From Diadema antillarum (taxonomy: Eukaryota): a DNA stretch of 64,000 nucleotides. The notes under the pieces are model-generated. The model was given only the letters and a program-made list of their open reading frames with translations. It was not told the origin of the DNA and did not search any database. Within the stretch, counting starts at the first letter, position 1; each line of letters starts with the position of its first letter. Below are positions 441 through 20,699 of the stretch, piece by piece. Location: the NCBI RefSeq assembly GCF_040938485.1, contig NW_027271052.1:930001-994000 (forward strand). Reading direction: 5' to 3'. Made by a program: the position numbers and the translations under genes.

Positions 441-3400
441 TGTTTTGTTTGTTTGTTTGTTTTAAACACGGGTAAAACATACTTGCACTCAGCCGTTAGG
501 CTGTTTTTCAGCAAGTCCGTATGATATACACTGTACAAAAAACATAATGTGGTACAATCAACGTATAGAATAATACATAGACAATAATCGGTATAACGAA
601 ACAAAAAGATGAAAAAAAATACATATATACACAACACTCTTTACAAAACAGTCAGACAGTAGAATGCAGTAAGAAGAAGAAAAAAATCTCGGAAAGGAAG
701 TGATTAAAAAAAAAGAAGATATTACTCAGAAATAGAAAAACTCATAAATCAAGTAAGAAAACAGAATCGATATCCTTCAGAAATTGTGCTAACCTTGTAC
801 ATGTTCTCGTGGCTTCCGGTAATTGATTGAATAATTGAGCTGCTATGTAAACAGTACTACTTTTGCAGAAATTGGTCTTTGGTTTTGGTAACAATACTTT
901 AAATGCCGAGTTCCTCAGATTGTAATTAGATACTTTTACGTTCACTTGATAAGTCAGAAAATCAGGCAAGAGGTTATTCAAAACCTTGTAAATAAAAACA
1001 ACAAGATCTTTTTTCACTTTTGCACTGAGGCAGTCAATAGGCAGCCTCCCATACAAATCTCGTCTATTGTGACGATGATCCACTTTCAGAACAGTTCGCA
1101 AGGCTCTGTTCTGAAGTATTTGCAGTCTTTTTATGTGACCAGAATTTGGTTTCATCCAGATGGTGTTACAGTACTCAAAGTGAGGACGAATCATTGTATT
1201 ATACAGGGTTAATGCGGTGTCTTGGTCAATGTATGGTCTTGCCCTTCTTAAAGCGTACAAATTACGTAACACTTTACTTTTTACGCTGTCAACCTGTGGT
1301 TTCCAAGAGAATTCTGAGTCAATGATAACACCTAGATATTTACAACTTTTTACCTTTTCTAACTGAGTACCATTAATTCTTATACTAACATTTTCAATTT
1401 TTTTACGATTACGCTTAGTACCTATAAACATACATTTACATTTTTTAACATTCAACATAAGCTTATTATGAAGTAACCATTCATGCACGGTACGTAAATC
1501 ATCATTAACAATTCTTTCAAGTTCAATAGGATCAGTGGATGCATAATAAATACAGGTATCATCCGCATAAAGCGACACTTGACAATTTCTAACTACCCGA
1601 GGCAAATCATTCATATACATGATGAACAACAAAGGTCCCAAAATACTTCCCTGAGGGACCCCACAGAGCACCTCACCCTCCTTTGAAACATTACCATTGA
1701 TTACAGTTTGTTGTTTTCTTTGGCTGAAATAATTTACAAACCAGCGTATAGTATCCTCACAAAATCCGAAAAATCGTAATTTTTCAATCAAAATATCAAA
1801 GGATACCATATCAAAAGCCTTTAAAAGATCGAGGGTAACCACAACAACAACTTGTCCAACATCTATAACTTTATTTACATTTTCAGTGAGGTTTAATAAT
1901 GCCATTTCTGAAGAAAATTTTGGGCGAAAGCCATATTGTTTTTTTGTCAATAAATCATTTTCATTAAGATAAGCATATACTTGTTTAAACACCAACTTTT
2001 CTAAAATCTTTGAAGCTACAGGCAAAACAGATATTGGCCTATAATTTGAGGGATCAGTTGTATCACCACCCTTGAATAGAGGTGTTATTTTAGCACACTT
2101 CCACTCGTTCGGGATAACACCATCTTTCAATGACAAATTTACTATGTGGGTAAAAGATTTAAGGATAACTGACACAGTGTCCCGTAGGATACAAGCTGGT
2201 ATGGTGTCAAGCCCAGTAGCCTTATTTCGGGGCGTTTTATCAATACACTTCTTTACCTCATCAGCTGACACCGAAGTGAATTCAAAAGTTGTACGTGCTC
2301 TCGGTACATATTGCATAGGATCATTTTTAAAATGTACATTTTCTCTGTTTCGCAAAACCAAATTAGAAAAGTGGTTGTTCAGTGCATTTGCAACATCTTT
2401 GTACCCTGTATACTCGTTTCCATCATATGTAATTTTATGAACTTTCGTAGAGGATTTAGCGCTCGGTATAAGCTCTCTTAAGACTTTCCACATGAGGGTG
2501 GAGTTTCCCACATTTTCCCTAATATTATCAATAACATATTTCCTTTTAGCTTTTCTAACAGATGAGGTTACCAAATTACGTAGACTTCCATATTTCTGCC
2601 ACTCATAATCATTATTCATGCGTTTAGCGGCCTGTTTTGCCTTATCTCTTTCTCTTATCAAAGCCATGACACCACTAGTCATCCAAGGTGACCTCTTTTG
2701 TCGAAGCCTTTTCTTTTTGACTGGGGCATGCCTATCCAACAGAGATCTTAGTTTATGAACCCAGATGTGATATGCTTTCTCTGTTGATGTTTCTTGTAAT
2801 ATTTCATCCACTGAAGAGTCATTTAATTCATTTACAAATTTTTCAATATCAAGCTTTCTCATGTTGCGTGATGAAATATAACAGTGGTTACCACCTGATT
2901 TCGGTTTACACTTACGCCATGAGAAAAGAACCATTTCATGGTCACTTAGGTTGAAAGGCAAGACTTTGCATTGTGAAATATTTTCACTCTTTGATGTATA
3001 AACATGATCAATGAGTGTTTTAGAGTGCTTTGTTACTCTCGTTGCCATGGAAACACATTGAGTTAATGAGTATTCTTCTGCTATACTTTGCATACGAGAA
3101 GTATGATACGAGGGTTTCTTGTTTAACAGATCACAATTCACATCTCCTACCAGAACATAATCACAATAACGAGCTTCAACACTCTGAAGTATATTTTCAA
3201 GACCATGAAATATATTGATAGACGAATCTGGCGGTCTATACCACGACATTAGGATAAAAGGCTTTTGTTTATTAAGAGTTACCTGTATACACGCTAACTC
3301 TAAGCCTCGATTATGATACTCTTCAAGGGCCACGTAATCTAAAGAACTGCGCACGTAGATAATAACGCCCCCACCATTTCGATTTCGGTCATTACGAACT

Positions 3401-4086
3401 GTCTTGTACCCATCAATACATATTTCATAGTCAGATACTGACTCATCAAGACGAGTTTCACAAAAGGTTATTATATCAATACTAGTTTAATCAGAAGTAA
3501 TCGAATTTCATCCATATTTTTCAGAAGAGAGCAAATATTCAAGTGTGCAATACTTATTCCACCAATTATTTTGAACTCATTAACAATCTGTTCATGATCA
3601 CTTATTTCTATTTCTGTATGACTGTCATCTAGAACATTGTGTTCAAAATCTACATCCGGAACATTATAAGGAAGTTCAAACATTAAACATTTAGTACACA
3701 TATAATCAGAATTTGACTGAAAAAAGTTGTAAGTTACAGACGAACACATCAAATGAATCCATTCGTTACATCTAACACACTGAAGAGCATTTTGATCATA
3801 CTTTACAGATCTATTACATGAAATGCATGGAAATATCCGGCCCGTTGGAAAAAATCATGCATGTGATAAGATGCTATTTTTCTGTCACCAGTTCTAGAGC
3901 TTTTCTAGATCTTTGATCGATCTGATTTTTACCTTCTTGTCATCCCTTGTCAGTACTGAGATTCGTCCATCGGTAGTCCACACTCTCTTCACCTTCTCAT
4001 GCTTCCTCGCCATGTAGACAAGGTTGCTCCTCTCTTGCGTGAGATCCTCGTGGATGTACACATTGGAGCCTTTCAGTTTCTGTCTT
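441..4086 (-). mobile_element. Non-LTR retrotransposon, L2/Crack/CR1 group, 5'-truncated within ORF1, ORF2 nearly intact
   Basis: ORF1 C-terminus 3894-4086 (KLKGSNVYIHEDLTQER...VWTTDGRI); PHD finger 3687-3827; APE (HLNICSL, DIITFCETRL, GGGV, GDVNCDL, SDH); RT (PQGSILGP, YADD); 3' stem-loop GAAAAACAGCC..GGCTGAGTG and (AAAC)n tail at 441-463. Confidence 0.93.
742..3354 (-). CDS. LINE ORF2 (apurinic endonuclease + reverse transcriptase), 870-aa open part
   Basis: ORF track 742-3354 with RT motifs NYRPISVLP, QYGFR, PQGS, YADDT, YLG; same frame is open upstream to about 3480. Confidence 0.93.
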   Translation of the reverse strand: MRSSLDYVALEEYHNRGLELACIQVTLNKQKPFILMSWYRPPDSSINIFHGLENILQSVEARYCDYVLVGDVNCDLLNKKPSYHTSRMQSIAEEYSLTQCVSMATRVTKHSKTLIDHVYTSKSENISQCKVLPFNLSDHEMVLFSWRKCKPKSGGNHCYISSRNMRKLDIEKFVNELNDSSVDEILQETSTEKAYHIWVHKLRSLLDRHAPVKKKRLRQKRSPWMTSGVMALIRERDKAKQAAKRMNNDYEWQKYGSLRNLVTSSVRKAKRKYVIDNIRENVGNSTLMWKVLRELIPSAKSSTKVHKITYDGNEYTGYKDVANALNNHFSNLVLRNRENVHFKNDPMQYVPRARTTFEFTSVSADEVKKCIDKTPRNKATGLDTIPACILRDTVSVILKSFTHIVNLSLKDGVIPNEWKCAKITPLFKGGDTTDPSNYRPISVLPVASKILEKLVFKQVYAYLNENDLLTKKQYGFRPKFSSEMALLNLTENVNKVIDVGQVVVVVTLDLLKAFDMVSFDILIEKLRFFGFCEDTIRWFVNYFSQRKQQTVINGNVSKEGEVLCGVPQGSILGPLLFIMYMNDLPRVVRNCQVSLYADDTCIYYASTDPIELERIVNDDLRTVHEWLLHNKLMLNVKKCKCMFIGTKRNRKKIENVSIRINGTQLEKVKSCKYLGVIIDSEFSWKPQVDSVKSKVLRNLYALRRARPYIDQDTALTLYNTMIRPHFEYCNTIWMKPNSGHIKRLQILQNRALRTVLKVDHRHNRRDLYGRLPIDCLSAKVKKDLVVFIYKVLNNLLPDFLTYQVNVKVSNYNLRNSAFKVLLPKPKTNFCKSSTVYIAAQLFNQLPEATRTCTRLAQFLKDIDSVFLLDL

Positions 4087-4445: not shown

Positions 4446-5848
4446 TAGTTAAGCTTCTGGTAATTTCTTATATTCCTGCATGTATAAAATCTAATAACTA
4501 ACAAAGATCAAGATCAAAAGCAATCCATATAGTAGTGAATACGCTATGCTTTCTATAAGAGCTCGATCTGGGCGTTTGCTTATGTACTCGTATTCCTGTG
4601 TTCGTGGGAAATCTTTGAATTGTGAGATAATATACAACTGAAACCAAAATCTAAAGTGTGCCACGCAAGCAAAGATGCCTCTTGAGTATCCAAGACTGGT
4701 TAGAAATTGTTGTGGTTGTTTTATCATTAGTTAGGATTTGTTTTGAAGTTTTTCATTGTTGTATATTCGGGGGTTTTCTTGTGATGTCGCTCAAGATTCT
4801 CTTACATCATAAACATCTCATGGCTTTATTGGTTTGTTCTTTTCTATCTTATTTTGTTCAATTTGATTTGATTTGATACAATTTATTACATCTTTCCCCT
4901 TCAGCACAGTGTAATCACTAATGCATGGATGCGCATAACAATCACTTTACTCATTGCATGCTTTGTGCATTGCATGTTTCAATCGCTGTTGGATGCACTT
5001 TGACACTTTAATATCCATAAATTTATTTAACAAGTTAACACTTTAACGCTCTGAATATCACAGTTTTAGAGGATACTTAACCTCTTCTACCATGCCTACG
5101 ACAAAATTCTAAAGCTTCATTGTGTATATCATGTGTAATTGTCACTGAAATTACACATTGCACTGGAAACAACTCACTGGAGAATGGACTCTCAGGCCCC
5201 GCCTATACGATGAACCTCTGAACTGTTAGTGCTAAGTGTCTGTATGCTAGTCACAAATAACCTATTTTTAACATCCGCCTGTACCTTCCCCTCTTTCACA
5301 TTACTCCAGTGTATCGTGTCCGGGCGTGTGTATGAGTGTAGGTGCTCGCTCGCATGTGTGTGCGTATGTCGCAGATATCATGTGAAATATCATTTACAGA
5401 AGTGGTGTGTTTATTTTCGCATAAATGAGACTCCAGGTTTGTTGATATAAGCCTGTAATAAGATTCAGGCTAATTAATGTTTCCGCAAAGTTTTACTGCA
5501 AGTGTCATCCTGTGCATCACAACTACAGGTTTTCAAAACTCATACAACACTAGTACTGATGACCGGTACTTTCCATTGTTCTTAGCATTATTTATACATG
5601 CATTTTTCTCTCTGGAGAAACGTATAATATACAGGACACCTCACAACCAATATCATAAAGGATGCCCTAATACAATGCAACTACGAGTCATTGTTTCAGT
5701 CACAGGTATCATAGCGTGACGTTGGCATCGATTATAGGCAGCTGCCAGCATTTCAGAATTTTACAACTGTGATTATCATGATTATTGAGTCTTAATTTAT
5801 GGCATACCTTTTTCTTTTTTAAACAGGTCCATGACACCCTTTCATTTT

Positions 5849-6132
5849 CTACACTGTTACGCTAGCAACTGATATTGACCGCAAGTTATTCACTTCCGGT
5901 AGGTCGCAGAGGGCGTAGTTGTAAGTGCCGTCGGCTGGGTCCGCCAGGATGCCGATGCTCTTCGTGAACAGCCAGTAGATTTTCCCGCTAAAAATAGCCA
6001 CGTCGTACAAATCTTCTCCCTCGTTGGTGTCAACATAAGCGGACAAGTTAGTGAAGACGGTGGAGTTGGTATCAGTCACGTACTTGTACATTGCCGCGTT
6101 GAGTTGACTTTCACAGAAGAAAAGCCGATTTC
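5849..6132 (-). CDS. YWTD propeller terminal exon
   Basis: atatag|GNRLFFCESQ...LYDVAIFSGKIYWLFTK...NLRSISVASVTV-TAG. Confidence 0.85.
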
Positions 6133-6834
6133 CTATATTTTTCATACACAGCCGTATTGAGATTAATGAGAAGGATGCAAGCAACAAAGATTGAATTAAA
6201 AGAAAAGATAAATGCTCGTCGGACGCTCAATTGTCATGACGTTAAACTGATGCAACGAATTCTAACTTCTGGTGTCCAAATTTGAGCCTGTGTGGGCTGC
6301 TTCAAGTAATGCATGCAGAGATCCTAATAAACCTGCTCTGATATAATTCTAAGTCGACAACAACTGAGAGGGTGGAAATCAAAACGATCCAAGTATTCAC
6401 CTCCGTGAGAACTTTGTTACTGACTGCAGACGAATATAAAGATACAATCATCCGCCTAAAGCTTTTGTTGGACTCCGTTTTGTGCAATAATTGCAGGGAA
6501 GGATCCAGGAATTTCGTAAATGGTAGGCGCCTTTACACAGCACACTTCCCCCATATTTTTTTTAATATTTATTTATTTTGTTGTAATAAAAAAAAGGGGG
6601 TGCGCCCGGTGCACCCCCTCTGGATCCGCCTCTGAATTGCTTGTTATTTCTTCTTTTTTTTCGACTGCCACAGAAGCTATATATTAAGAAAGAAAAAAGT
6701 ACTTTGTCGTACATGCAGACACATGAGCACAGTCATAGACAGACACCTGTATGTACGTACACGTATCTAGCTGATTTCATTTAAGGATTCATTCAGTTAT
6801 GCATTTGTTCATTTACTGAAATAAATGAATATTT

Positions 6835-6872
<38 letters not shown>

Positions 6873-8624
6873 TTTATATACATTGTGGTTGATTTGTATC
6901 ATACCTGCGCTGTCATATTCCAATCCCTGCAACTGGTCCATTCCGCTGTTGTAAAAAAAGGTTTCCACCGAAGTACTCCCGTTCATGGCTTTTCGCTGGA
7001 TAGTGTATGACTTAGCCCAGTACACCATTCTACAGCCAGAAAAATAATCATAAGGATTATGATTGTATTAAACATAGAAAATACACACGCCTGAAAGCTA
7101 AAACATAAAACATATATCACATCGATGAGTGTCATTGCTTAGTTTCGTTGATTCCATGTAAATGTCATGCATCTTGTCTCACAACTGATCTGTGTTTATG
7201 CTGTTATTTGGAATATGTATTTTCTTTTTGTAAGCTTATATTCTTTCTTGAAAATAAAAAGGAATAATTCAAATTCATGAAATTCTTCCGTCGAGATGTT
7301 TTCATTGCAACTGATTGACAAATTGCCCTACGTCGACGTAAATAAGCACTGAATTGATCAGTATTTCAGTAGAAGCCATGAAAAAAAATCATGGGCGTAC
7401 GTACTCGAACAGGATTCGAACCCGCGACCTCCTGACCACCGCACAGGCGTCATCTCCACTAGACCACCGAACTTTCGCCGCGCGACAGCAAGTGTTGGTT
7501 CTAATCCTTACTAGCTTACAGCATGCAACGGGTACTGCTCTATTATTCAAATTCATGAAATTCTTCCGTCGAGATGTTTTCATTGCAACTGATTGACAAG
7601 TTGCCCTACGTCGACGTAAATAAGCACTGACTTGATCAGTGTTTTAGTAGAAGCCATGATAAAAAATCATGGCTTCTACTACTTAGTCCATGGGCCAGGC
7701 CAGATATTGGTACCACCTGAGGTGGCAAAACCTTTTTGGTGTCATTTTGTTTGTCGGGCATAGATATGCTTATCAAGCTATGATAGCATTTCCAAATGAG
7801 TAGCTTAGTCATAATAAATGAATTTTTAACCAATTTGGTCTCGTTTTTATATCCCTATACTTCTGAATCGAAACTAACCGCTATACAAAGAAGAGCACTG
7901 TCTTCTGTATATGTCCACAGGTGTTATGTTGTAAACGATGTGCGCTTAGTCTTTATTTAAGGCAGCGAAGGGAACATCCAAAGGGTTATAATGTCCACAG
8001 CTGTCATGCGGTGCGCTTAGTCTTTATTCAAGACGGCGAAGGGAATATCCAAAGCTTATGATACAGTGTATATCCCTTTATCTAAAAACAACAACAACAA
8101 AAAGCAATTCCTCGTGAATTTTGCCGTATTTTTCAATTATTCGTCATTTTCCGCTGAAAACGCTACAGTGAAAACGCTAATGCCACGCCAATGTCGCTTT
8201 ATTTCCATCCAACAATGAAAGATAATGCGAAAACAATGTACCAATATACTACAATACACTATAATAAATAATATTGTTAATGAACAGAGTAATTTTTGTT
8301 TAAAGCTGATGTATTTGTTGAGAGGGTAGTATAAAAACAGTACAAAACAGTTATAGATGTGATAACGGTACAGTATTTTGTTTTGTTTTTTCTTTTTTAG
8401 CAGTGTTTACCAGAATATTTACCAGAATATTGTTGTTAATCAGGCAAAACACACACACACACACACAGAAACAATTGTCACATAATGTAAAGACGCAGTA
8501 TTGTAGCAGAAATTAAGAACACATTGACAGGACAATGAAGGTCAAAGAGACAAAAGAAGGGGGTGAGAAGAAAGAAAGAGAGATCTGATGCCACGCAACT
8601 CCATCACCAGCTGGAAGTACGAAT

Positions 8625-8683
<59 letters not shown>

Positions 8684-11600
8684 GGTCTTCTTTACCCAGG
8701 GTAACCTCTTCAGTGTTGCCACTGCTCTACCAGAGGGCCCTGCCATTATTATTACCCTAGCATTGCCAGGTACCCATTTATACACCTGGGTCGAGTGGGA
8801 CATAGTGGGTAAAAACATCTTGTCCAAGGACGTAAGCACTGGGCGGGATTCGAACTCGGGTCCTCCGATCGGGAGTCGGGAATCTTATCCACTATGCCAC
8901 AGCGCCCCGGAGATCAAGGTGAGTTGTCCCGGAGATCAAGGTGATCAAGGAGATCAAGGTGAGTTGTTACATTTCACTGTGCTTCTGTTTTAATATAACC
9001 GGTGAAATTTTGATGGTGTTATTTTTGGGAGCATCGTATGCTAAATATATGTGCCAAAATTCAGAGGAATAGGTTTAAAAACCTTGAAATTATCAAAGGT
9101 CACCATGCACTCTGCCTGTATTTGGTGAAAGAGCGTCAAAAAAAAATTTTTTGGTATTGGTCGGGTTAATGGCTGAAATCTATGACTAAGCTACTACTCT
9201 GGAAATGCTATCATAGCAAAATAATAATCCTTAGATATATGCCATTTCATAATGCACAACTAGAACTTGCCACCTCAGGTGGTACCAATAACCCATTTTT
9301 CGGGTCTTGGCCCATGGACTAACTATGTGACAATTGTTTCGGTGTCTTTTTTTTTTGTGTGTGTGTTGTTGTTTTTTTTGGCCTGAATAACAACAATATT
9401 CAGGTAAACACTGCTAAAAAGAAAAGAAAAACATAACAAAACAATGTACCGTTATCATATCTAAAGTTCCTAATAAAATGGATTATCTATGTTGTTTTTA
9501 TACTACCCTCTCAACAAATACATCACTTTTAAACAAAAATCACTCTGTTCATTTACAATATCATTTATCATAATGTATTGTAGTGTACCGAAACATTGTT
9601 GTTGCATTATCTTTCATTGTTGGATGGAAATAAAGCGACATTGGCGTGGTATTAGCGTTTTCACCGGAAAATGATGAATAATTGAAAAATACGGCAAAAT
9701 TCACGAGGAATTGCTTTTTGTTGTTGTTGTTTTTAGATAAAGGGATATACACTGCATCATAAGCTTTGGATATTCCCTTCGCCGTCTTGAATAAAGACTA
9801 AGCGCACCGCATGACAGCTGTGGACATCATAACCCTTTGGATGTTCCCTTCGCTGCCTTGAATAAAGACTAAGCGCACATCGTTTGCAACAGAACACCTG
9901 TTGACATACAGAAGACAGTGCTCTTCTTTGTATAGCGGTTAGTTTCGATTCAGAAGTATAGGGATATAAAAACGAGGCCAAATTGGTTAAAAATTCATTT
10001 ATTATGACTAAGCTACTCATTTGGAAATGCTATCATAGCTTGATAAGCATATCTATGCCCGACAAACAAAATGACACCAAAAAGGTTTTGCCACCTCAGG
10101 TGGTACCAATAACCTATTTTTCGGGTCTTGGCCCGTGGACTATACTTATCATGGCTTCTACTAAAACACTGATCAATTCAGTGCTTATTTACGTCGACGT
10201 AGGGCAACTTGTCAATCAGTTGCAATGGAAACATCTCGACGGAAGAATTTCATGAATTTGAATAATAGAGCAGTACCCGCTGCATGTTGTAAGGATTAGA
10301 ACTAACACTTGCTGCCGGGCGAAAGCTCGGTGGTCTAGTGGAGATGACGCCTGTGCGGTGATCAGGAGGTCGTAGGTTCGAATCCTGCTCGAGTATGTAC
10401 GCCCATGATTTTTTTATAATGGCTTCTACTAAAACACTGATTAATTCAGTGCTTATTTACGTCGATATAGTGCAATTTGTCACTCAGTTGCAAAAAAAAG
10501 GAATAAGTTTGTATGTGTTCTTCCCTTACGTTATTTTTGTTCTAGTTTTCAATTCCAGTTGTCAATCATAGTTCAGGTTCTTCAGTGATATTTTAATTCG
10601 GTCAATGTGTGTATAACTACTCTTTATTCTCGATAAGATTAGCCTTATTGAGGTTTTTTCTCACTTTTAAATGATCATTACATTTGTCCTGATTTAAATC
10701 ATCTTCAGCCTTTCCAAGCAAAGACAAAAACCCACAACAACATGAACAACAGCAACAAAAACAAAAACAAAATGTGATCATTCTTACTAATGCTGAAGGA
10801 AGGTGTTCAACAGTCTGACGGATTAAACATTTTCCAAGTCAGCTTACTCCGACCTACGAGGGCGCTATCCACTTGAACTCGAAAGCAGTCACGATACATT
10901 TATCGTTTCGACATTAATTATCATTATTTTTATTGTTGTTACTATTACTATCATTATTATTGTTATTATCATCATCATCATCACCATCATCATTACAATT
11001 ATCATCATTATTGTTATCATTATTATTATAATTGAATATGGTGCATAAATAGCAGTAATAGTAGTAGTATTTAACATTATCATTTGTTTTGTTTTTATCT
11101 TCCTTTTCTCTTTTTTTTTTATTTCTTACCGTCTTTCTTTGTCTAGCTCAACATCATAAATGGTTTGAACGTTCTCATCGCTGTGGAATTCTGAATGGTT
11201 GAATGGACTGTCAAGATGAGCTTTGAGGACCCTGTTTGATTCAGCGAAGTACATGACGCGGGAGCCTTCGTCTATGGCAATGCCTCTGGGATCTGCGACA
11301 TTTTTAGAAAGATAAGTAGCAAGAACAGGTACAGACCGACCGACTGATATGGCAATAAAAAAAATGTAATTTCATAATATTCTTCACAGAGGGCATCTTG
11401 CGTTTGTAGCTTAAATAGGTATAGAATAAAGAGGAATAATTATTGTAGGAGGAACATTTTTTTTTGTTCTGTCTCATATGCAATAAGTTTCTGTGAAATA
11501 ATAGCTTCACGTGAAGCAATAGCTTGTTGTAAGTGCTATCATCAAACAAAAGTATAGCATGAGCTTTCGATACATCTTCAGAAGCGTCCGTATTACACAC

Positions 11601-14600
11601 ACACACACACACAAATTAATCTTGTTTATTTACGAAACAAAGTAAAATATGAGGTAAGTGGAAGTGTATGTCCAAAATTTTATAAAGAGATTTTACAAGC
11701 GTGGCAAGATTTGGGAAGTTTGAGAAATTTAGAAGAGGGACATTTGAATCAAGTAGTATTTGATAATAATTTTTTTTTATTCAAAGGTAAAATGATATAT
11801 AATGGAAATCTTTTTTTAGGAAAAATATTTATAGATTATGTCATTACTTTGATGGAAAAGGTATACGGCCGATTATTTATTTTCAAAAAACAGGTTTATG
11901 AGGTGAGGAATTGAATATGTTTGGAGGATTTGTGATGTTATTTTGAAAAGTGGACGGTTTAGTTTGTCATGGGTTAGTATTAAACTTTTTCAAGTGCTGG
12001 TTAGAATTACACGGAAAAGAAATTAGGATTGGTGATATACCTTCGAGAAAGATTTACACCCATTTTTTAACTGATTTACAGCAGTTATATACAGTGGAAG
12101 TACGAGATCAACAGAGTAATTTCGCCTTCTCCCAAAAAGTAACCCAATATATTTTTCTCCGACCCAGAGTCACAACTCTTATCCCAAAGATTAGGGAATT
12201 TCAGTTTAAACTTCTTCATAGCGCACTTTATACAAAAGTTAATCTGTTGAGATTTGGGTTTGTTTCTGATGATCTATGTTCTTTCTGCAAAAAAGCACTG
12301 AGACATATTCACATTTATTTTTGGAGTGTATTGAAGTGCAGGAATTGTGGCAAATTATTATTCAGAAATTGAATTTAGAAGAATTAGGAAATGTAAACTG
12401 GGAAGTTGTTTATACAGGTATATCCGGAAACTCATTAAAAGTCAAAGGATGGAATACAATTATATTGATGGTTAAACATATTTTGTATTTAGCGAGATCA
12501 GAAGGGAAAGTACCGAAGTTTGATGATTTTGTGAAGTATTTTGATATGTGTAAAGAAGAAGAAAATAAGATAGCGAGTAAAAGAAGAAAAGTTGTAATGT
12601 ATTTGCAAAAGTGGGAATATTTGAAGTATACCGAGGATGATACGTGATTTTTTTTTTGTCTTGATTTTGCCGTATCCGCGAGTTATTATCACATCGTTGT
12701 CGGGTTTTTTTTTCTCTCTCTCTATTGCTTCTACCTTTCCACATCATCTCCATATTATGATTAGGATGCATTTTATTGTATGACAAATAAAATGGCAACT
12801 TACACGGCAGAGTTATTCAAGTGTTGATATAAACCTGAGGGCTGAAGGCACGGGGAGGGTGCATGGGGGAGGGGGGAAGGGGGAGGGCATAATGGTGTTA
12901 TGTTGGTGTGTATGTGTGTATGTGTGTATGTTTTCTCGGAAATGGCCTTTTTTTTCTCTTTTTTTTCGAGAAGCAATGAAATATGCCCGTTTTTGTTTTT
13001 TTTGTTTTTAAGCAAAATATCTATTATGTTCCTGTTTTGCGGGCTTTTGCGAGAATATGTGTTAAAAAATTAAAAAGCGGATTTGGTGGGGTTTTTTTTT
13101 TAGTTAAAAGAGTTACAGAGTAAGTTTGACATTATTTTTGCACAATGTTGGTATTACTGCATTTTGTTCTTATGTAGTGTAAGTTGATGTTATTTTGTAT
13201 CATGATTGTGTATGTCTGTTTTTGTATGATGTCTTGTTTTTGTTTTGTGAACGTTTCTGATTCTTGTGACATGATATTGAACGAAATTCAAATAAAGAAT
13301 TATAAAAAAAAAATGTCATCAATATTTGGCGAAAACTAACACGAAGTAAATACATCTGAAGCTGCTTCCTTGGATTTAGTTGACAGATCGACGCGCAAAA
13401 TTTGGTAGACGTCGCACCAGTACAGCTTATTCTGCACACTCTCGTACGCCAGACAGTATGGTGTTGTCGAAAAGTTGAAAAATTCGGCGACAGTCTCATT
13501 GTCGAGGTCTGCAACATAAACTCCTTGGTTTCCATGACCAACAAAGATGGTGGCACCTGCGGCAACACAGAATTGAGAGAGAAAGAATGAAAATCTATGT
13601 AATCATTGTCTGAATTTTCTGGAGATACTTTTAGAACATTCTAGAGTCTTCTAGAAGATTCAGGAAAGATCAAAGTCCCGTGAAATGTTGACTTTAATGA
13701 ACAACGATCAACTATACTTACGTTAATGAAATACCCCGAATTTTGTAAATGGTATAGTCGAGTTGAAGAAGTGTTCAGTTTTACAAGCAATCGAAATATC
13801 ATTGTGATTCCTGAACTTTCCTGTATTACAGTGTATTATAATGTATTATACAAAATGTTCGATTCAAGGGAGAACTGACAATCAATGTGCGTAGCAAAAA
13901 CAAGTGATACATGTATATGATGTATGTTTACTTTTCAAACGAATTGTGAATAAACAAAACATTAATCATAAAAGGACCTATTTAATATCTTACATTTTCT
14001 ATAAAACTATGATAAGTATCCCTATTACAATTCTATAGTTGTTAAAATGGGTTTTGTGGGAGGGTTCCTGTATGTGTAGGTGGTCTTTATGCAGGAAGCA
14101 TCAGTGCTTCAGCATGTATAGCCATGCTCGATACGGATGGATGCGTAATATGGTGAGAAAGAAAGTTAAAGTTGTTGCCAAGGGTATGACTGTGGTGACA
14201 TGTTGATAGCGTGTAGTACTAAATGTTAATAATCTATCAGCACGTTTCCATTATATCTTAGTCATGAAACTTCAAGCGAAATCAACTTGTCTTCTGGCAT
14301 CGTAAGTGGTGTCTGTAAATAACCACGTATTACCTTCCGGTGTTTCACACTTCAAATCTGTTGTCTCTGTTGAAGCGGGCAAGGTAGAAACTCCAGTGGT
14401 TGAAGCGTCATCAGTTGTTTGACCGAGGGAAGTTGTTGAGGATGATGTAGCGTCCACCCCTACGGTAGACCTCTTTTGTGCGTTTTGCGTCGGAGCTGAC
14501 GTAGACAGCTTTCTCGACTTTGTGACAGTTGATGGTGCAACATCGGGTTCCGTAAGTGGAGAATCTGTTGAGAATGGTAGCTCGCCTGTATCCATGGTAA

Positions 14601-15431
14601 CTGACAAGTATGTAGATTGCGCGGCAGTTAGTGTCGTAGTTGACAAGGGAGTCGTTGATAGCACATCTGTGGTCACTTCAGTGGGTTGTTCTAAAGTTAT
14701 TGGAGTGCTGTGAAATTGGGTTGAGAGAACCGTTCCTTCTCTCTCCGTTGTCGGTTGCTCTTGTGAGAAAAGTAAAGCAGACACTTGAGTCGTTTGTGGT
14801 GTAGTTGTCGCGAGAGACGTCTGTTCGAACGATGCAGTCTCCTGACCCGTTGTGTGTGGAGTGTCTTCTGTCTCCGCCGCTGTCTGTTCTTCACTCCATT
14901 GCGGGTGTGTGGTTATTTTTACCGCAGTTGACGCTTGTTCGTCGGTGGACAACATTGTCATAGCGGAGGTAGTCTCCTCTTGTAAGGTTGTCAGTGACAA
15001 AGTAGCAGCATTTGATGTCTGAAGAGGTGAGTTTTCCGTTGCCACTTGCGATGTTTGCATTGCGGTCGTAGCATCAGTTGTAGTTTGGGTTGGCTTAGAT
15101 GGCGTTGCTTCTTCAGCCAAGCTGGTTTCTTGGAAGGATGATGTATGGGAGAACGTATTCGCTTGTGTAGTGGCACGAGTTGTCTCAATCAACGTGGCTA
15201 AGAAAGGTGACTCCGTCGTTGCTCGTGTATTTCCCGCAGGCTCTGTTGATGTTTGTGATCGTGTAGGAGTTGTTGCAACGTAACTCTGAGTTGTTTCCAC
15301 ATTTTCTTGCTCTGTCGTGCTTGTTACGGAGGCTGTAAGAAGGACGGGATAAGAGCGAAATTTTAATCACTGGGTTATTGCCTGAAAGGAGGCACGATAT
15401 GACAGAGTCGAAATGTACTCAATTATTATTA

Positions 15432-15471
<40 letters not shown>

Positions 15472-16549
15472 CATAATCTATTCAATTATTATGGTAATAA
15501 GAACGATCACTGAGTAATGATGGTGTGACAATCGCAAGTTCTTTCCGCTTAATGGATAGCTAGTGGTTAGTATCGGTAACGATTGGGAGTACAGCTGGTA
15601 ACTTGAGGAATGCAGAAAGCTAAAAAGTCTAGATCTTACTTACTGTAGTCAAGAGCGGGACGGCAGACAAAATGACGATGGCCTCTGGGAAATGGGAGAG
15701 ATATTTCATGTGGAAATAGATTTATCTGTTCGCCTCGTGAACCGTTGATTGCACGACATGGATTAATCTTCTGATCTGTCCATTCCAAGTCATTTGTTCC
15801 GTTTCTTAAACAAAGAGTGCCAACTATCGACTGATCCCCCGGCGACAAAAAGGCGTTGAAACCTGCAACTTCATTATGAAACCAATATCGAAACAGTATA
15901 AATTTCTGTGATTAGTTTGCGATGTAAATGCAACAAATTCTTCATTCAGTGCAACAATAAAGAAGAGAATGGTATAGATCAAAGAACACTTATCGATGTT
16001 TCGCTCTTTTAGATTTCGTTTTGGAGATCGGTAACATATTACCTTTATGAAATTCTTCCGACATAAATCTTTCCATATCAATATCAATATCATTTTCCAA
16101 CCGACCAAACGGAAGTCTTCTTTTTCTCTCGATTGACAATAAGGATGTTTAATCGTATTTCTTATCCTGGGTATTTTCCTCCCTGGGTTTGCTACTCCTT
16201 TGCTAACGAGCATTTGCTAGCATGATTATACAATAAGGTAGATAATATATGCAGGGTTCAACATTGGCGGTGACCCGGTGTTCCGGGGCTATTATAGAAA
16301 TTGTTGGTGTAGGGCCATCAGACTTTCAGAAGGTATATCTTTTGGTGGCCCGACCTAGCAACTAAGAGTCAAATATATCGCTATGTTGAGTCCTATTATT
16401 CAACGCCCTTACCATTCCGTTTCGAGCCATCAACATTTCAAACATTATGATTTTAGTGGCTCGAACGGACCTTCAGAGAAACGAAGCTAGTATCGAGACC
16501 TGATATAAATCAATACACCCCCATGCACACACACAACACATTATGATCA

Positions 16550-16608
<59 letters not shown>

Positions 16609-19600
16609 GTGTGTGTACGTGTGTGTGTTTATTTTTATATATAGTAAACAACAAAATGACTTATTAGTGACAACTNNNNNNNNNNNNNNNNNNNNNNNNN
16701 NNNNNNNNNNNNNNNNNNNNNNNNNNNNNNNNNNNNNNNNNNNNNNNNNNNNNNNNNNNNNNNNNNNNNNNNNNNNNNNNNNNNNNNNNNNNNNNNNNNN
16801 NNNNNNNNNNNNNNNNNNNNNNNNNNNNNNNNNNNNACGTGATATACAAGGCACTGAATAGCGGCGCCAATCATGTAAGTCTTTCCCAGGAAAGTTCGAA
16901 AGGTAATCCGAGAGATTACTATCTTGCAATTCTGGAAATTAACAGTTCGGTCAATTTGTTTGACGTGGTCTTTGAATGAATTGATAGACCTACCTTGGGA
17001 TGTAAAGATGATGATGAAGAAGAAAGCACGTACGACAAATCCAGCCGGAAATATTCCCCTTGCCTGCAAATTAAGTAAATAATAAAATCTGATTATCTGA
17101 TTGAACTGTCATGATTTGTGATTATAATGATAAAAATGTTTGACGAAATTGTTTAGTTTTTCCTTCTTCAAAATTACGAACGATAAAGGTCTGTATCGCA
17201 TTTAGGAACAACACAGCTTTCAGTACGTGGCATTTAACGGTCTACTAGTTTCTGTTGATTACTATCAACAATCATCTGTGTCCTGATAAACTAAAGGTTT
17301 ACTCGTAGCTATATTTTCCATGCAAAGTTGCGATACAGAGCTTCAGCCATAAAGTGAAAAAAAGACGGCATGATGTGGGGGGGGGGGGGGAATTGACGAG
17401 GGGGAACTGGCCATGGCAAATATGTATGTATAATGGATTTTTATATATATAACATATTCATCTACTCATTCATTAACATACTTAGTCATTATATAGATAG
17501 ATAGATAGATAGATAGATTAGATAGGTAGATAGATAGATAGATAGATAGATAATGAAAGATGAAGGCATAGACATGAGTGTTTTCTTTTATCTCTTGTTC
17601 CTTTCATGTTAGTGGATGTTAGAAGGTGAAACTAGGTCTTAACTTGAAGCATCAGCCTAGATAGTGTAGAAGCTGTGGCACGAATCAAAGACTATGCAAT
17701 GGTTCATAAATATTCAATGCACTAAACTCGATCTGTTCACCACTATCCACTGTCACTAGATAACTTAAAGGCATAACTTACCATTTGCAGATGAAACGAA
17801 AACCCAGCATTAGTGCTTTAAAGTAGTTCTAAAGTGTGAGTTAGAGATAGAAACAACCACTGTAAAATTTGAATCAGTAAAATCGATTCTAAGTATTGTT
17901 AAATATACAAAATGTGAACAATAGTTATAATAAAAATGTTTCAAAACTAAACCGTATACCGCTACGGTTTACTGAGAAAAATGATGACATCTCCTCATAA
18001 CTTTGGCTTTATTGCAAAACTTTCACATGGAAGGGTGTTTTGTGGTACAACAGACCTACACATATGCATGAAAGGCGATATCTTGAACATTTTGCAAATG
18101 ACTGCTCCCAAAGGTAAACTGGACCTTTAAGGCACATTTCATCTAGCCTTAATCTCACATCCAACCCAAGAATTGTTCTTGAGCAATCACAGGTAGCCGC
18201 AGATGATCTGATCACTGAATTCTCCACACGGACAAAAAAAAAATGATGCCTTTTAATGCACCTGACCTGATTAAGACTACAGAAAATTAGGTCAGTTTGA
18301 CACNNNNNNNNNNNNNNNNNNNNNNNNNNNNNNNNNNNNNNNNNNNNNNNNNNNNNNNNNNNNNNNNNNNNNNNNNNNNNNNNNNNNNNNNNNNNNNNNN
18401 NNNNNNNNNNNNNNNNNNNNNNNNNNNNNNNNNNNNNNNNNNNNNNNNNNNNNNNNNNNNNNNNNNNNNNNNNNNCAAAGACCACCCAAACTAGCAATAG
18501 GTACTTGTCATCTTGTGGGATTACCCCGTTGTTTTCTCCCATAGACATTTTAATTATTACTCGTATAATGTCATTTAACCCCCACAGTGCCTTACTGCCT
18601 GAGTAAATAAAGTGAAACATAGGATAAAACCCCCACAATGTACCTCTTGCTCGTCCACAAACACACACTCACACACACACACACAAAAAAAGAATCTGTT
18701 CTAATAGGACTCCAGTAATAAGATGTAATTGCCTAATTTACATAGGCTAACATATTACATATTTCCCTTCCAAATCGTGTGTGCTTGAGCGCTTCCGTCA
18801 GGGAGATGAGATTCACCTCCCTGCTTCGGTATATTGAAATGATGTATGACAAAAGCAGCAGTGAGGGTAAATTCCTTTAAATTAGAGCCATGATAATGAC
18901 AAAAGTGATAAAATTTCTACAACAGTAAAAATCGTTGCAGTCATACTAGTAAGAAAAATATAAAAAGCGAAAGAATTGTAACATCTATTTGTACTCACAT
19001 TTGTATTTGTTACTTTATGAGAATAACTGATAATATTTTCTTTTAAACTTTGTACTCTTAGCTGTGCAAGTATATATAACAAAACAGTGATTTGAATGGG
19101 ACAGAATGGAAAAAAAAAGTAAAACAGGATGCAGTAAAGACCAGAAATGAAAATCTCAGAAATATAACAATGACCGATATAATGAGTATACAACGTCATA
19201 AACAAACAAGAAAACGAACCTAGAAGTGGTTTAATTGGAGTGCATCTACCTACATTATTAACATGGTTCTATTTCAAAGATTAATTTCAAAAAATCATAA
19301 TTTTTATGAAAACATGAACGAAAATAGAATTAAGCGTAATTGTACATTTATACTAGGGTAAATATAGCAAATACATTATGAGTTTATCTGTATGTAATTT
19401 TCACTTAAAACAGGTTTCAGTTTCAATCATCATCAGCCTTCTGGAAATATGAAGGGAATGATATGTTTAGAGGCTCATTCTCTTATCACAATTTCATGTT
19501 TGCCTATTTCAAGTGATGAAATAAATTTCGTGTTAACATGACAGCGTATTACAGTCCTTCAAAACTTACCATCTTTCGTCTATGCAGATTCTGTCCTCCA

Positions 19601-19644
19601 AGAGAGCCTCCAGTTGCCATTTTTTGACCCATGAGGCATATCAG
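5849..19644 (-). CDS. Secreted or membrane-anchored protein: degenerate C-type-lectin-like domain + Thr/Ser mucin stalk + YWTD (LDL-receptor class B) beta-propeller; at least about 725 aa
   Basis: join complement: 19570-19644 (tentative), 16994-17063, 16931 into gap at 16836 (tentative), 15644-15862, 14334-15332, 13341-13556, 11130-11292, 6905-7029, 5849-6132. Junction phases are compatible from 15862 to the stop. YWTD-like repeats: PYCLAYESVQNKLYWCD, PRGIAIDEGSRVMYFAE, IYDVELDKERRMVYWAK, LQGLEYDSAGNRLFFCE, LYDVAIFSGKIYWLF. Confidence 0.8.
6494..6634. mobile_element. Short MITE with CAGGGGCGGATCCAG-type TIRs
   Basis: CAGGGAAGGATCCAG...CTGGATCCGCCTCTG, flanked by AATTG on both sides. Confidence 0.65.
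6905..7029 (-). CDS. YWTD propeller exon C
   Basis: ctgtag|MVYWAKSYTIQRKAMNGSTSVETFFYNSGMDQLQGLEYDSA|gtatga; phase 2 to 1. Confidence 0.85.
7402..7473 (-). pseudogene. Mirror copy of the tRNA-like cloverleaf
   Basis: AGTTCGG-TGGTCTAGTGG...GCGGG-TTCGAAT-CCTGT-TCGAGTA; T8 run downstream. Confidence 0.7.
8629..8908 (-). mobile_element. tRNA-derived SINE with conserved central domain and (TTA)n tail
   Basis: A box TGGCATAGTGG, B box GAGTTCGAATCC; core TCCTTGGACAAG...CACTCGACCCAGGTGTATAAATGGGTACC (Deu/Nin-type core by recognition); second copy at 40160-40424. Confidence 0.8.
10324..10395 (+). pseudogene. tRNA-like cloverleaf (72 nt) with non-canonical anticodon loop, inside a 280-bp repeat unit
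   Basis: A box TGGTCTAGTGG; T-arm GTAGG-TTCGAAT-CCTGC; D stem GTC/GAC; T7 run about 12 nt downstream; anticodon loop lacks Y32-U33. Confidence 0.7.
10905..11075. repeat. Degenerate (ATT/ATC)n microsatellite
   Basis: Direct inspection. Confidence 0.85.
11130..11292 (-). CDS. YWTD propeller exon B
   Basis: gtcgcag|PRGIAIDEGSRVMYFAESNRVLKAHLD...IYDVELDKER|gtaaga; phase 1 to 2. Confidence 0.85.
11613..13313 (+). mobile_element. Degenerate 5'-truncated Tx1/L1-clade LINE (ORF2 C-terminus, 3'UTR, poly-A)
   Basis: Frameshifted fragments FYKEILQAWQD, REFQFKLLH, CSFC..ETYSHLFLEC (zf-RVT/CCHC); stop at 12647; AATAAA 13291-13296; A-tail 13304-13313; starts next to (CA)n. Confidence 0.8.
13341..13556 (-). 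CDS. YWTD propeller exon A
   Basis: ccgcag|ATIFVGHGNQGVYVADLDNET...NKLYWCDVYQILRVDLSTK...|gttagt; this frame is absent from the ORF track; donor choice less certain. Confidence 0.8.
14334..15332 (-). CDS. Mucin-like Thr/Ser-rich exon (999 nt)
   Basis: cttacag|SVTSTTEQENVETTQ...ETTDLKCETPE|gtaata; ORF 14272-15300; phase 1-1. Confidence 0.88.
15644..15862 (-). CDS. Cys-containing exon resembling the C-terminal half of a C-type lectin domain
   Basis: ttgcag|FNAFLSPGDQSIVGTLCLRNGTNDLEWTDQKINPCRAING...RHFVCRPALDY|gtaagt; phase 1-1; LEWTD, C and FVC motifs. Confidence 0.7.
16676..16836. other. Assembly gap (161 N)
   Basis: N run; probably hides coding sequence of gene 2. Confidence 0.99.
16837..16931 (-). 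CDS. Tentative exon running into the N gap (possible N-terminal half of the lectin-like domain)
   Basis: ttccag|(E)LQDSNLSDYLSNFPGKDLHDWRRYSVPCISR then Ns; phase 1, W-x5-6-C pattern; preceding intron would be only 62 nt. Confidence 0.4.
16994..17063 (-). CDS. Signal peptide/anchor exon of the lectin-mucin-YWTD gene
   Basis: ttgcag|ARGIFPAGFVVRAFFFIIIFTSQ G|gtaggt; hydrophobic core; phase 0 to 1. Confidence 0.65.
17769..18126 (+). mobile_element. MITE family B (short TIR, TTAA TSD, Kolobok-like), 358 bp
   Basis: TTAA|AGGCATAACTTACC ... GGTAAACTGGACCT|TTAA; homologous to 54145-54503 (inverted) and 51829-52070. Confidence 0.78.
18304..18475. other. Assembly gap (172 N)
   Basis: N run. Confidence 0.99.
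19570..19644 (-). CDS. Tentative start-codon exon of the lectin-mucin-YWTD gene
   Basis: ctgtcag|..MGQKMATGGSLGGQNLHRRKM|gtaagt; ends in ATG at phase 0, matching the phase-0 signal exon. Confidence 0.45.
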
Positions 19645-19886
19645 CTGACAGAAAAAGGAAATGTGTTTTCAGTGACAAAGCCTAGCTCCTTGGGCAACTC
19701 TAGAGTTTGAAAGTTTACCTATATTTGAGGGGAAGGATTGCAGGCTATCATATGGAAAGCTACACGAAATTGGATGAAAGAGACACGATCACAATTCGCG
19801 ATGCCCTTGGACAGAGTGGTACTAATGGTTACCCCATGCTGTGGGACCGCCTTATAATCCGGTGTATACGTCGTTGGATGTGCACC

Positions 19887-19900
19887 GTTACCAAGGCAAC
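19887..19900. promoter_or_regulatory. RFX X-box consensus near the 5' end of the lectin-mucin-YWTD gene
   Basis: GTTACCAAGGCAAC matches GTNRCCNNRGYAAC exactly. Confidence 0.35.
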
Positions 19901-20699
19901 AAAGTGATAATGCCGCTATCTTCCCCTTACAAAAAGCAAACATGATTTGTGCTACTTACGCTCTATGCAGCATCAATCAGTGATCCTTATCTGTATATAC
20001 AAGTGCAAACAGTGAATATTAACAATACCAAATTTGGAAGGATCTGTTATGACATATGTCTTGATTATCTGCATATCAATCCGCTGATGATTACAAAAAT
20101 ACGTTATGATTTTGATGAATTTTCATTTTCTCTGTCAAATACGACAGTTCGTAGCCAAGTGATCTAAATCGTCAGGAAAGCAAACTTTTCAAAGCATCAA
20201 TAAACATCCGATTATGCACTCATGATTCAAAAAAAAATTCCTTGAAATCTCATTAGTGAGCTATCAAATCTATCTCTCTCTTTTAAATGCATTGCGTTTT
20301 ATCAATTTTGTTGTTATGTCGGGCAAGCCTCCATGCACACTGAAAAAAAAATTGAATCATCAATCATCATCATCTATCGAACAGGTCTCTCACAGTCACC
20401 TGTAAACACACATTTAAGTCAAGTCTTCGCATTCACGATTTTTTTAATATAAAAATCATTTGGTGATAACTATATAACATCTTCTTTACCCAATGTCGAG
20501 ATTGCACAGAAGCATTCCTAACCAACCTGATCGTAATGAGTCTTTATAAGGAACACGTGATCTTCGAGGTAACTTGTAGCTTTAGCTCTCATTGGAGCAG
20601 TCAGTTGGGTAGGGTGTTGAATAGCAGGTGTCACTTTATAATACGCACGCGTAGTACGAGAGCTGAAGGGGATAGGGGATCCATCAACTGGAGTTTTAG

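What the first reader, a model, noticed from the sequence alone, without database searches (positions are those of the whole stretch)
5849..19644. Hidden gene with an unusual architecture: lectin-like domain, mucin stalk, terminal YWTD propeller, no EGF or TM
Seen: eight to nine phase-compatible minus-strand exons; two propeller exons are absent from the ORF track in the coding frame. They give a hydrophobic N-terminal segment, a Cys/Trp domain, a 333-aa T/S tract, and five YWTD-like repeats plus closing strands that end at a stop. Established: YWTD propellers (LDLR/LRP, nidogen, pro-EGF) are protein-binding modules almost always followed by an EGF module. Inference: a bifunctional extracellular tether with a glycan-binding end and a protein-binding end held apart by an O-glycosylated rod, e.g. 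in mucus, adhesive, immune or gamete coats. I do not recognise this domain order from any named family.
Basis: partly seen in the sequence, partly recalled or inferred. Interest (0 to 1): 0.75.

Follow-up and report, generated by a model that had tools for sequence, protein, structure and literature searches.

The report
Sea-urchin mucin-stalk YWTD propeller gene
This looks like a real sea-urchin gene for a probably secreted protein with a small two-cysteine module, a long sugar-carrying stalk and a terminal YWTD-type propeller; it belongs to a large gene family seemingly restricted to this lineage, and it has no lectin domain.

Summary
The 3' two thirds of the finding hold. Six minus-strand exons (15862-5849) have GT-AG sites and matching phases. 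They encode a 73-aa Cys-motif exon, a 333-aa T/S-rich exon and four exons (about 262 aa) of a divergent six-bladed YWTD propeller that ends at a stop. No EGF or TM exon follows.

The 5' third does not hold. No lectin domain exists. The "Cys/Trp" material near gap 2 is an interspersed repeat. Both assembly gaps lie upstream of every supported exon. The start-codon exon is unresolved; the best candidate is 19943-19892.

The gene is one member of a family of at least 30 loci in this genome, probably Diadema antillarum. The family layout is a short signal exon, a conserved two-Cys motif, a variable spacer (none, EGF modules or T/S-rich exons) and a C-terminal YWTD propeller. At least two other loci carry a T/S-rich spacer, so the domain order recurs.

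The Cys motif has no relative in Pfam, in PDB or among 1.84 billion proteins. No RNA run was listed, so the splicing is inferred. I left out the joined-protein step. An earlier scan note, s1-217854, flagged a related small YWTD gene elsewhere in this genome.

The parts
19892..19943 (-). Best candidate for the start-codon exon. It has 17 codons plus 1 base, reads as a signal-peptide start (MFAFCKGK then a hydrophobic run), has the donor TTG|GTAACG and ends in phase 1. Low confidence.
   Evidence: My scan for ATG plus a hydrophobic run plus a phase-1 GT/GC donor. The stretch is unique in the genome, present only in the three gene copies, and identical in all three. Its size and phase match paralog exon 1. 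It shows no sequence homology to paralog exon 1.
16043..16093 (-). Weaker alternative first exon (MILILIW...). A phase-1 donor exists only as the weak T|GTCGGA at 16063. The good donor at 16043 is phase 0 and would need the poor acceptor at 15905.
   Evidence: Sequence reading. There is a 26-nt similarity to one paralog exon 1 (score 30 against a shuffle maximum of 26). It is not found by the nhmmer profile.
16676..16836 (.). Assembly gap 1. It lies upstream of the Cys-motif exon, so it is either inside intron 1 or hides the true exon 1.
   Evidence: Paralog exon 1 lies 0.5-4.6 kb upstream of the Cys exon. Letters were not looked up.
18304..18475 (.). Assembly gap 2, in intron 1 or the 5' flank. 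Its 3' flank (18012-18302) is an interspersed repeat.
15644..15862 (-). Cys-motif exon, 73 codons, phase 1/1. Its first part is a hydrophobic and then polar stretch, probably the end of the signal peptide. After that comes the conserved module N-P-C ... G..GE.I..FP.EI..P ... RH..C.P.
   Evidence: Splice sites. The motif is found in 91 places in the genome. In the 13-sequence alignment N33, P34, C35, G40, E44, I46, F49, P58, C66 and P68 are invariant. The paralog exon has the same acceptor and donor phase. The model has pLDDT 70-86 for residues 31-70 and is disordered before that.
14334..15332 (-). T/S-rich, mucin-like exon of 999 nt (333 codons), phase 1/1, non-repetitive.
   Evidence: The C289 copy keeps the same length and an open frame at 93% identity, and the C142 copy is identical. 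Paralogs carry T/S-rich exons at the same position.
13341..13556 (-). Propeller exon p1: degenerate blade 1 and the first YWTD motif (LYWCD).
   Evidence: phmmer against PDB gives 14 hits, all LRP YWTD propellers, best LRP4 at E 1.1e-5. The profile built with paralogs gives LRP4 at E 1.9e-24. Against C289 the exon is 95% identical with no indels, while its flanks are 86% identical.
11130..11292 (-). Propeller exon p2 (PRGIAID...MYFAE), phase 1/2.
   Evidence: Exon 92% identical against 85% in the flanks, which have 140 gap columns. Weak LRP4/LRP6 hits only.
6905..7029 (-). Propeller exon p3 (MVYWAK...), phase 2/1.
   Evidence: Exon 94% identical against 80% in the flanks. The C289 copy has a stop here, W to stop.
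5849..6132 (-). Propeller exon p4 (LFFCE, IYWLF, closing strand) and the stop codon at 5851-5849.
   Evidence: Paralogs also end 1-8 aa after the aligned closing strand. The fragment model has pLDDT 72.5, and its best Foldseek matches are LRP6, LDLR and megalin propellers at probability 0.99 but E 0.07.

Best explanation
The locus is a seven-exon gene, six exons supported and the first unresolved. It is one member of a gene family that seems restricted to this sea-urchin lineage and encodes extracellular proteins. The family plan is a short exon that starts the signal peptide, then a 70-aa exon that finishes the signal peptide and carries a conserved two-cysteine module, then a variable spacer, then a C-terminal divergent six-bladed YWTD (LDL-receptor class B type) beta-propeller that ends the protein.

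In most paralogs the spacer is one to several EGF modules. In some there is no spacer. In this gene, and in at least two other loci, it is T/S-rich mucin-like sequence. Here that is a single 333-codon exon with a phase-1 intron on each side, so it can be added or skipped without breaking the frame.

Inferred mechanism: the protein is secreted. The T/S/P-rich segment is heavily O-glycosylated and acts as an extended, protease-resistant spacer. The propeller is the protein-binding head. The small disulfide module at the other end attaches or pairs the molecule. This makes a soluble or matrix-bound binding protein, not a receptor.

Shown: the exon anatomy, the YWTD kinship, family membership, and the absence of EGF, TM and lectin. 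Inferred: splicing of the exons into one mRNA, secretion, glycosylation and binding function.
For: - Splice sites and phases of all six exons fit.
- Against the diverged C289 copy the exons are 92-95% identical with essentially no indels, while the flanking intron is 80-88% identical with 10-15% gap columns. dN/dS is 0.35-0.44 in p2-p4.
- p1 alone hits only LRP-type YWTD propellers. The family profile hits LRP4, LRP2, LRP6, nidogen and LDLR, with E down to 2e-24.
- The top fold matches of the p4 fragment model are LRP6, LDLR and megalin.
- The Cys motif lies upstream of a p1-like exon, on the same strand and within 26 kb, at 34 places that I paired by eye.
- The spacers are Pfam EGF modules in the C710, C727, C511 and C237 paralogs; EGF-like exons also lie at that position in C952/C1449, seen by motif only. 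The spacers are T/S-rich exons in C750/C40 and C30.
- Paralog exon 1 encodes an M...LKMI..LLILT signal start that ends in phase 1.
- No TM-like segment exists: the highest 19-residue hydropathy is 1.27.
- Downstream DNA is a LINE element, not exons.
Against: - No RNA run was listed, so no junction has been seen in a transcript.
- The start codon and signal peptide of this copy are not established.
- The Pfam Ldl_recept_b model does not score any single exon, and the window is not among the 150 best genome hits.
- The C289 copy has a premature stop in p3, and overall dN/dS is 0.58. This could mean relaxed constraint.
- The whole-propeller fold and a signal-peptide prediction on the spliced product were not computed, because the joined step was left out.
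Confidence: 0.6

Rival explanations
1. The gene is real, but the T/S-rich exon is an optional cassette or is not used. The main product would then be the family-typical Cys-motif protein joined directly to the propeller.
For: The exon is symmetric, phase 1/1, so skipping it keeps the frame. Some paralogs (C297, C81) join the Cys exon to p1 with no spacer.
Against: The acceptor (pyrimidine run then CAG) and donor (AAG|GTAATA) are strong. The 999-nt frame is kept without indels in a copy that is 7% diverged. Paralogs carry T/S-rich exons at the same place.
Confidence: 0.12
2. The locus is a decaying or silent family member, a young pseudogene, and the intact frames only reflect recent duplication.
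For: The paralogous exon-1 sequence and its donor are not recognisable here. The C289 copy carries a stop in p3 and a W-to-L change in the first YW motif. dN/dS is 0.58 overall. There is no expression evidence.
Against: All six exons are open with intact splice sites in two copies. Exons are clearly better conserved than introns and free of indels. A plausible signal-type first exon exists at 19943-19892 in all three copies.
Confidence: 0.15
3. One reading: a lectin-like glycan-binding domain, a mucin rod and a YWTD propeller together form a two-ended tether, with further 5' exons up to 19644.
For: The Cys exon of this copy has a W.D..C-like stretch and ends in FVC, which looks superficially like the end of a C-type lectin domain.
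Against: Pfam finds no Lectin_C in any upstream open stretch. The W and the extra Cys are absent from all paralogs; only two Cys are conserved. The model shows a roughly 40-aa beta unit with no PDB match. The upstream Cys-rich stretch is a repeat element.
Confidence: 0.05

Closest known systems
YWTD (LDL-receptor class B) beta-propellers of LRP4, LRP5/6, LRP2, LDLR and ApoER2
   Same: About 260 aa with five recognisable YW-type motifs plus a degenerate blade. Sequence hits go to these proteins only. The top fold matches of the last two blades are also these proteins.
   Different: The propeller is very divergent, and the Pfam model misses the single exons. It is the C-terminal end of the protein, with no following EGF module, no LDL-A repeats, no TM segment and no cytoplasmic tail.
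Nidogen G3 domain
   Same: A secreted matrix protein whose C-terminal part is a YWTD propeller preceded by EGF-type modules. The nidogen chain 1npe is among the profile hits. The EGF-bearing paralogs resemble this layout.
   Different: There are no NIDO, G2 or thyroglobulin modules. The N-terminal two-Cys motif is unrelated. In this gene the EGF modules are replaced by a T/S-rich exon.
O-linked sugar domain of LDLR, VLDLR and ApoER2 (from my own knowledge)
   Same: A clustered Ser/Thr, O-glycosylated stalk in the same polypeptide as a YWTD propeller.
   Different: In those receptors the stalk is short (about 50-60 aa), follows the propeller-EGF pair and leads into a TM helix. Here it is 333 aa, precedes the propeller and there is no membrane anchor.
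C-type lectin domain
   Same: Only a short W.D..C ... FVC-like pattern in this one copy.
   Different: There is no Pfam match. The exon has 73 aa rather than about 120, only two conserved Cys, and no WIGL core. The pattern is not conserved in paralogs.

Membership tests
YWTD / LDL-receptor class B beta-propeller | Six repeats of about 43 aa with a [YF]W[TAS][DE]-like motif, about 260 aa in total | tested here: met
   Five motifs (LYWCD, MYFAE, VYWAK, LFFCE, IYWLF), a degenerate first blade and a closing strand over four exons, about 262 codons.
YWTD / LDL-receptor class B beta-propeller | Significant sequence similarity to known members | tested here: met
   p1 alone gives LRP4 at E 1.1e-5, and all 14 hits are LRP propellers. 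The profile with paralogs gives E 1.9e-24. p2 gives only weak LRP4/LRP6 hits (E about 1). A p4 profile built with paralogs gives no PDB hit. p3 was not searched on its own.
YWTD / LDL-receptor class B beta-propeller | Match to the Pfam model PF00058 above its cut-off | tested here: not met
   No hit for any exon translation at E up to 10. The window's exons are not among the 150 scored genome hits. The test is weak, because repeats are split by introns and only the best candidates are scored.
YWTD / LDL-receptor class B beta-propeller | Closed six-bladed fold | tested here: inconclusive
   Only the p4 fragment was modelled (pLDDT 72.5). Its best matches are LRP6, LDLR and megalin at probability 0.99, TM 0.55-0.57 and E 0.07. 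The whole-domain model needs the joined sequence, which I left out.
C-type lectin domain | A domain of about 120 aa matching Lectin_C, with four or more conserved Cys | tested here: not met
   No Pfam hit. Only two conserved Cys in a roughly 40-aa module. No structural match.
Mucin-like (PTS) domain | A long stretch with more than 40% Ser+Thr+Pro | tested here: met
   332 codons with T 27%, S 13% and P 6%, 46% together.
Mucin-like (PTS) domain | Tandem repeat organisation and dense O-glycosylation | tested here: not met
   No tandem repeat at score 30 or above. Glycosylation cannot be tested with these tools.
Diadema Cys-motif/YWTD family (defined here) | The N-P-C ... C.P two-Cys exon with phase-1 borders, upstream of a YWTD propeller on the same strand | tested here: met
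   Ten invariant positions are shared with 12 paralogs, the exon phases are the same, and there are 34 co-oriented pairs.
Secreted protein | N-terminal signal peptide and no TM or GPI signal | tested here: inconclusive
   There is no TM-like segment in exons 2-7. Paralogs have a signal-type exon 1. For this copy there are only candidates.

The most novel reading that the evidence does not exclude
The family is a diversified set of extracellular binding proteins that arose in diadematoid sea urchins. It would be built on a new small disulfide domain and a fast-evolving YWTD propeller. Phase-1 exon shuffling would swap the spacer between none, EGF modules and mucin-like sequence, to set the reach and environment of the binding head. 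It could serve, for example, in immune recognition, mucus or adhesive secretions, or egg and embryo coats.
Probability: 0.25. Interest if true: 0.6.

Novelty: new variant of a known kind. Interest (0 to 1): 0.42.

Why it matters
YWTD propellers are known almost only from large receptors and from nidogen, where an EGF module follows them. Here a whole family uses the propeller as a free C-terminal head behind interchangeable spacers, with an N-terminal module that has no detectable relative anywhere. This would be a clear natural example of domain shuffling through symmetric phase-1 exons. It also gives a pool of candidate secreted binding proteins in Diadema antillarum, an ecologically important urchin hit by mass die-offs. 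The value is limited until expression and ligands are known.

Tried and rejected
- RNA evidence: no RNA run was listed for 13300-15950, so read laying could not be used.
- Pfam exon by exon: nothing.
- ESM Atlas on the last exon: only unnamed phage or bacterial clusters, uninformative.
It gave three spurious hits (nitrogenase-like, SdrD-like, Sprouty-like). This shows there are no annotated relatives, but it also gave me no full-length protein to fold.
- The search for homologous proteins was not used. Its length window (0.55-1.75 times the query) cannot reach a protein of about 690 aa, or even about 355 aa, from any single open frame here.
- Upstream exons by homology: protein and DNA comparison with nine paralog upstream regions gave nothing for the window.
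- Exon delimitation upstream from the C289 copy failed, because that region is 97-100% identical, introns included.
- CUB-like reading of the Cys motif: considered from the C...C spacing and rejected, because there is no Pfam or PDB support and the exon ends 6 aa after the second Cys.
- Literature: searches for YWTD with sea urchin gave nothing relevant.
- Joined product: I did not build, search or fold it. That covers SignalP or DeepTMHMM, whole-protein Pfam, and AlphaFold of the full propeller.
Full report
**Setting.** The window is C164:930001-994000 of a 1.75-Gb assembly in 2963 contigs. Earlier scan notes call the genome Diadema antillarum. The size and scaffold number match the draft assembly in bioRxiv 10.64898/2026.05.24.727502 (1,754,675,526 bp, 2,964 scaffolds). 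That paper estimates a haploid size of 703 Mb, so the assembly is about 2.5-fold redundant. This explains the three copies of the locus. C142 is 100% identical in all exons searched there. C289 is 92-99% identical in the exons.

**Gaps first.** The gaps at 16676-16836 and 18304-18475 lie upstream of every exon I can support. Open frames that seem to cross them are N-to-X artefacts. The readable flank of gap 2 (18012-18302) is Cys-rich in translation, but it is an interspersed repeat with 13,380 first-look candidates in the genome. The flank of gap 1 is microsatellite-like. I did not look up gap letters in C142 or C289. The stretches I fetched from those copies lie outside the gap equivalents.

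**Exon anatomy.** From the DNA and a phase check, the minus-strand exons are as follows.

| Exon | Coordinates | Phase in/out | Splice sites |
|---|---|---|---|
| Cys-motif exon | 15862-15644 | 1/1 | acceptor TTGCAG, donor GTAAGT |
| T/S-rich exon (999 nt) | 15332-14334 | 1/1 | acceptor CTTACAG, donor GTAATA |
| p1 | 13556-13341 | 1/1 | acceptor, donor not noted here |
| p2 | 11292-11130 | 1/2 | acceptor, donor not noted here |
| p3 | 7029-6905 | 2/1 | acceptor, donor not noted here |
| p4 | 6132-5852, stop at 5851-5849 | 1/stop | acceptor not noted here |

- Counting one base from an upstream exon, the frame runs for 668 codons to the stop.
- Independent support comes from the diverged C289 copy. 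Exons p1-p4 are 92-95% identical with essentially no indels. Their flanks are 80-88% identical with 10-15% gap columns.
- dN/dS is 0.35-0.44 in p2-p4 and 0.58 overall.
- C289 carries a stop in p3, so that copy may be a null allele.

**The propeller.**
- Pfam sees nothing exon by exon. A six-frame PF00058 scan of the genome lists only canonical LRP-type genes among its 150 scored hits.
- Even so, p1 alone finds only LRP YWTD propellers in PDB, with LRP4 at E 1.1e-5.
- A profile of p1 with five paralogs finds LRP4, LRP2, LRP6, ApoER2, nidogen and LDLR, with E down to 1.9e-24.
- An AlphaFold model of p4 alone, from a six-sequence alignment (pLDDT 72.5), has the strand pattern of two blades. Its best Foldseek matches are LRP6, LDLR, megalin and ApoER2 propellers at probability 0.99, TM 0.55-0.57 and rmsd about 3 Å, although E is only 0.07.
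- Five YW-type motifs, a degenerate first blade and about 262 aa are the canonical YWTD count. I call it a divergent YWTD propeller.
- The protein ends right after the closing strand, as do four diverged paralogs.
- Downstream DNA (745-3854) is a LINE element with endonuclease, RT and PHD ORFs, not EGF or TM exons.
- No exon has a TM-like segment.

**The stalk.**
- The 999-nt exon is open in one frame only.
- It is T 27%, S 13% and P 6%, net acidic, and not tandemly repeated.
- It is kept at the same length and stays open in C289 at 93% identity.

**The 'lectin' end.**
- No Lectin_C or any other Pfam domain is found in the Cys exon, or in any of the 35 minus-strand open stretches from 15863 to 20200.
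- The Cys exon is instead a family signature. Its core, N-P-C ... G..GE.I..FP.EI..P ... RH..C.P, occurs at 91 places in the genome. Ten positions are invariant across 13 sequences, including just two cysteines.
- The W.D..C pattern that looks lectin-like is private to this copy.
- A profile of the motif finds nothing in Pfam or PDB. Among 1.84 billion representative proteins it gives only three spurious hits.
- Its model is disordered for residues 1-30 and forms a small beta unit for residues 31-70 (pLDDT 70-86), with no structural neighbour.

**The family.**
- Pairing the hits by eye gives 34 cases where the Cys exon lies upstream of a p1-like exon, on the same strand and within 26 kb.
- The paralog Cys exon has the same phase-1 acceptor and donor.
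- What lies between the Cys exon and p1 varies, in three classes:
  - No spacer: C297 and C81.
  - EGF modules. These score above the Pfam EGF cut-off in C710, C727, C511 and C237. C952/C1449 carry EGF-like exons seen by motif only.
  - T/S-rich exons: the C750/C40 locus has three, with T+S 0.31-0.45. The C30 paralog, the closest relative of p1 and p4, has a 96-aa exon with T+S 0.36.
- So the Cys motif, mucin-like and YWTD order recurs in this genome. The window gene is the variant with the longest single stalk exon.
- The symmetric phase-1 borders fit spacer exchange by exon shuffling. They also allow exon skipping.

**The 5' end.**
- Paralogs have a short exon 0.5-4.6 kb upstream of the Cys exon. 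It encodes the signal start M..RYP.C...LKMI..LLILT (MQLTSWCAVLIFLII in C750) and ends in phase 1, with a GT donor or, in three paralogs, a GC donor.
- The window has no recognisable homologue of this exon.
- The Cys exon holds no ATG, so a first exon must exist between 15863 and about 22.8 kb. At 22834-24051 the last exon of a voltage-gated channel gene lies on the same strand.
- Candidates:
  - 19943-19892. It is signal-like, has A at -3, ends in phase 1, is unique to the three gene copies and is identical in all three.
  - 16093-16063 or 16093-16043. It has poor sites.
  - An exon hidden in a gap.
- My rough odds are 45% for 19943-19892, 15% for the 16093 exon, 25% for a gap and 15% for something else.

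**Limits.**
- No RNA run was listed, so the splicing is inferred.
- Cross-species orthologues could not be sought, because the length window of the search for homologous proteins cannot reach the full protein from a single exon.

**Verdict.** The gene is real-looking, and the propeller and stalk are right. The lectin end and the upstream exons are not. It is a new variant of a known kind: a YWTD-propeller family seemingly restricted to this lineage, with a novel N-terminal module and swappable spacers.

Noticed in passing
window 745-3854, minus strand: A non-LTR retrotransposon with an uninterrupted 914-aa ORF (Exo_endo_phos plus RVT_1). It is preceded by a 127-aa PHD-finger ORF and lies directly downstream of the gene.
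   Followed up: partly
window 22834-24051, minus strand: A large terminal exon of a voltage-gated cation channel (Ion_trans plus GPHH). It bounds the 5' side of the gene studied here and belongs to the channel gene already noted at 43957-44481.
   Followed up: partly
window 18012-18302: An interspersed repeat whose translation is Cys-rich and open for 97 aa. It has 13,380 first-look candidates genome-wide, many at 80-95% identity, and is easily mistaken for an exon.
   Followed up: partly
L021/L034 (C289:401450-412500) against window 5700-16600: Divergence between the copies is patchy. The Cys-exon side is 97-100% identical, introns included. The propeller side has 80-88% identical introns. 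The C289 copy has a W-to-stop change in p3 and a W-to-L change in the first YW motif. This points to gene conversion, or to a null allele on one haplotype.
   Followed up: partly
L031:849-961, L045:7279-7384, L032:750-850 (paralog exon 1): Three of five paralog first exons use a GC donor (AG|GCAAG), where the other two have GT. This is a family-wide GC-AG first intron.
   Followed up: no
window 7200-7700 and 10100-10500: Repeated SINE-like elements with tRNA-like '...GFES...' frames sit inside the long propeller introns. They also occur in paralog introns (L021, L023).
   Followed up: no
L039:1729-5266 (C511), L036/L041 (C952/C1449): Retroelement ORFs are inserted in the introns between the Cys exon and the EGF exons of paralogs: an 867-aa open frame in L039 and smaller open frames in L036/L041. 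I judged these by their look only and did not scan them against Pfam. They explain the large and variable gene spans.
   Followed up: no
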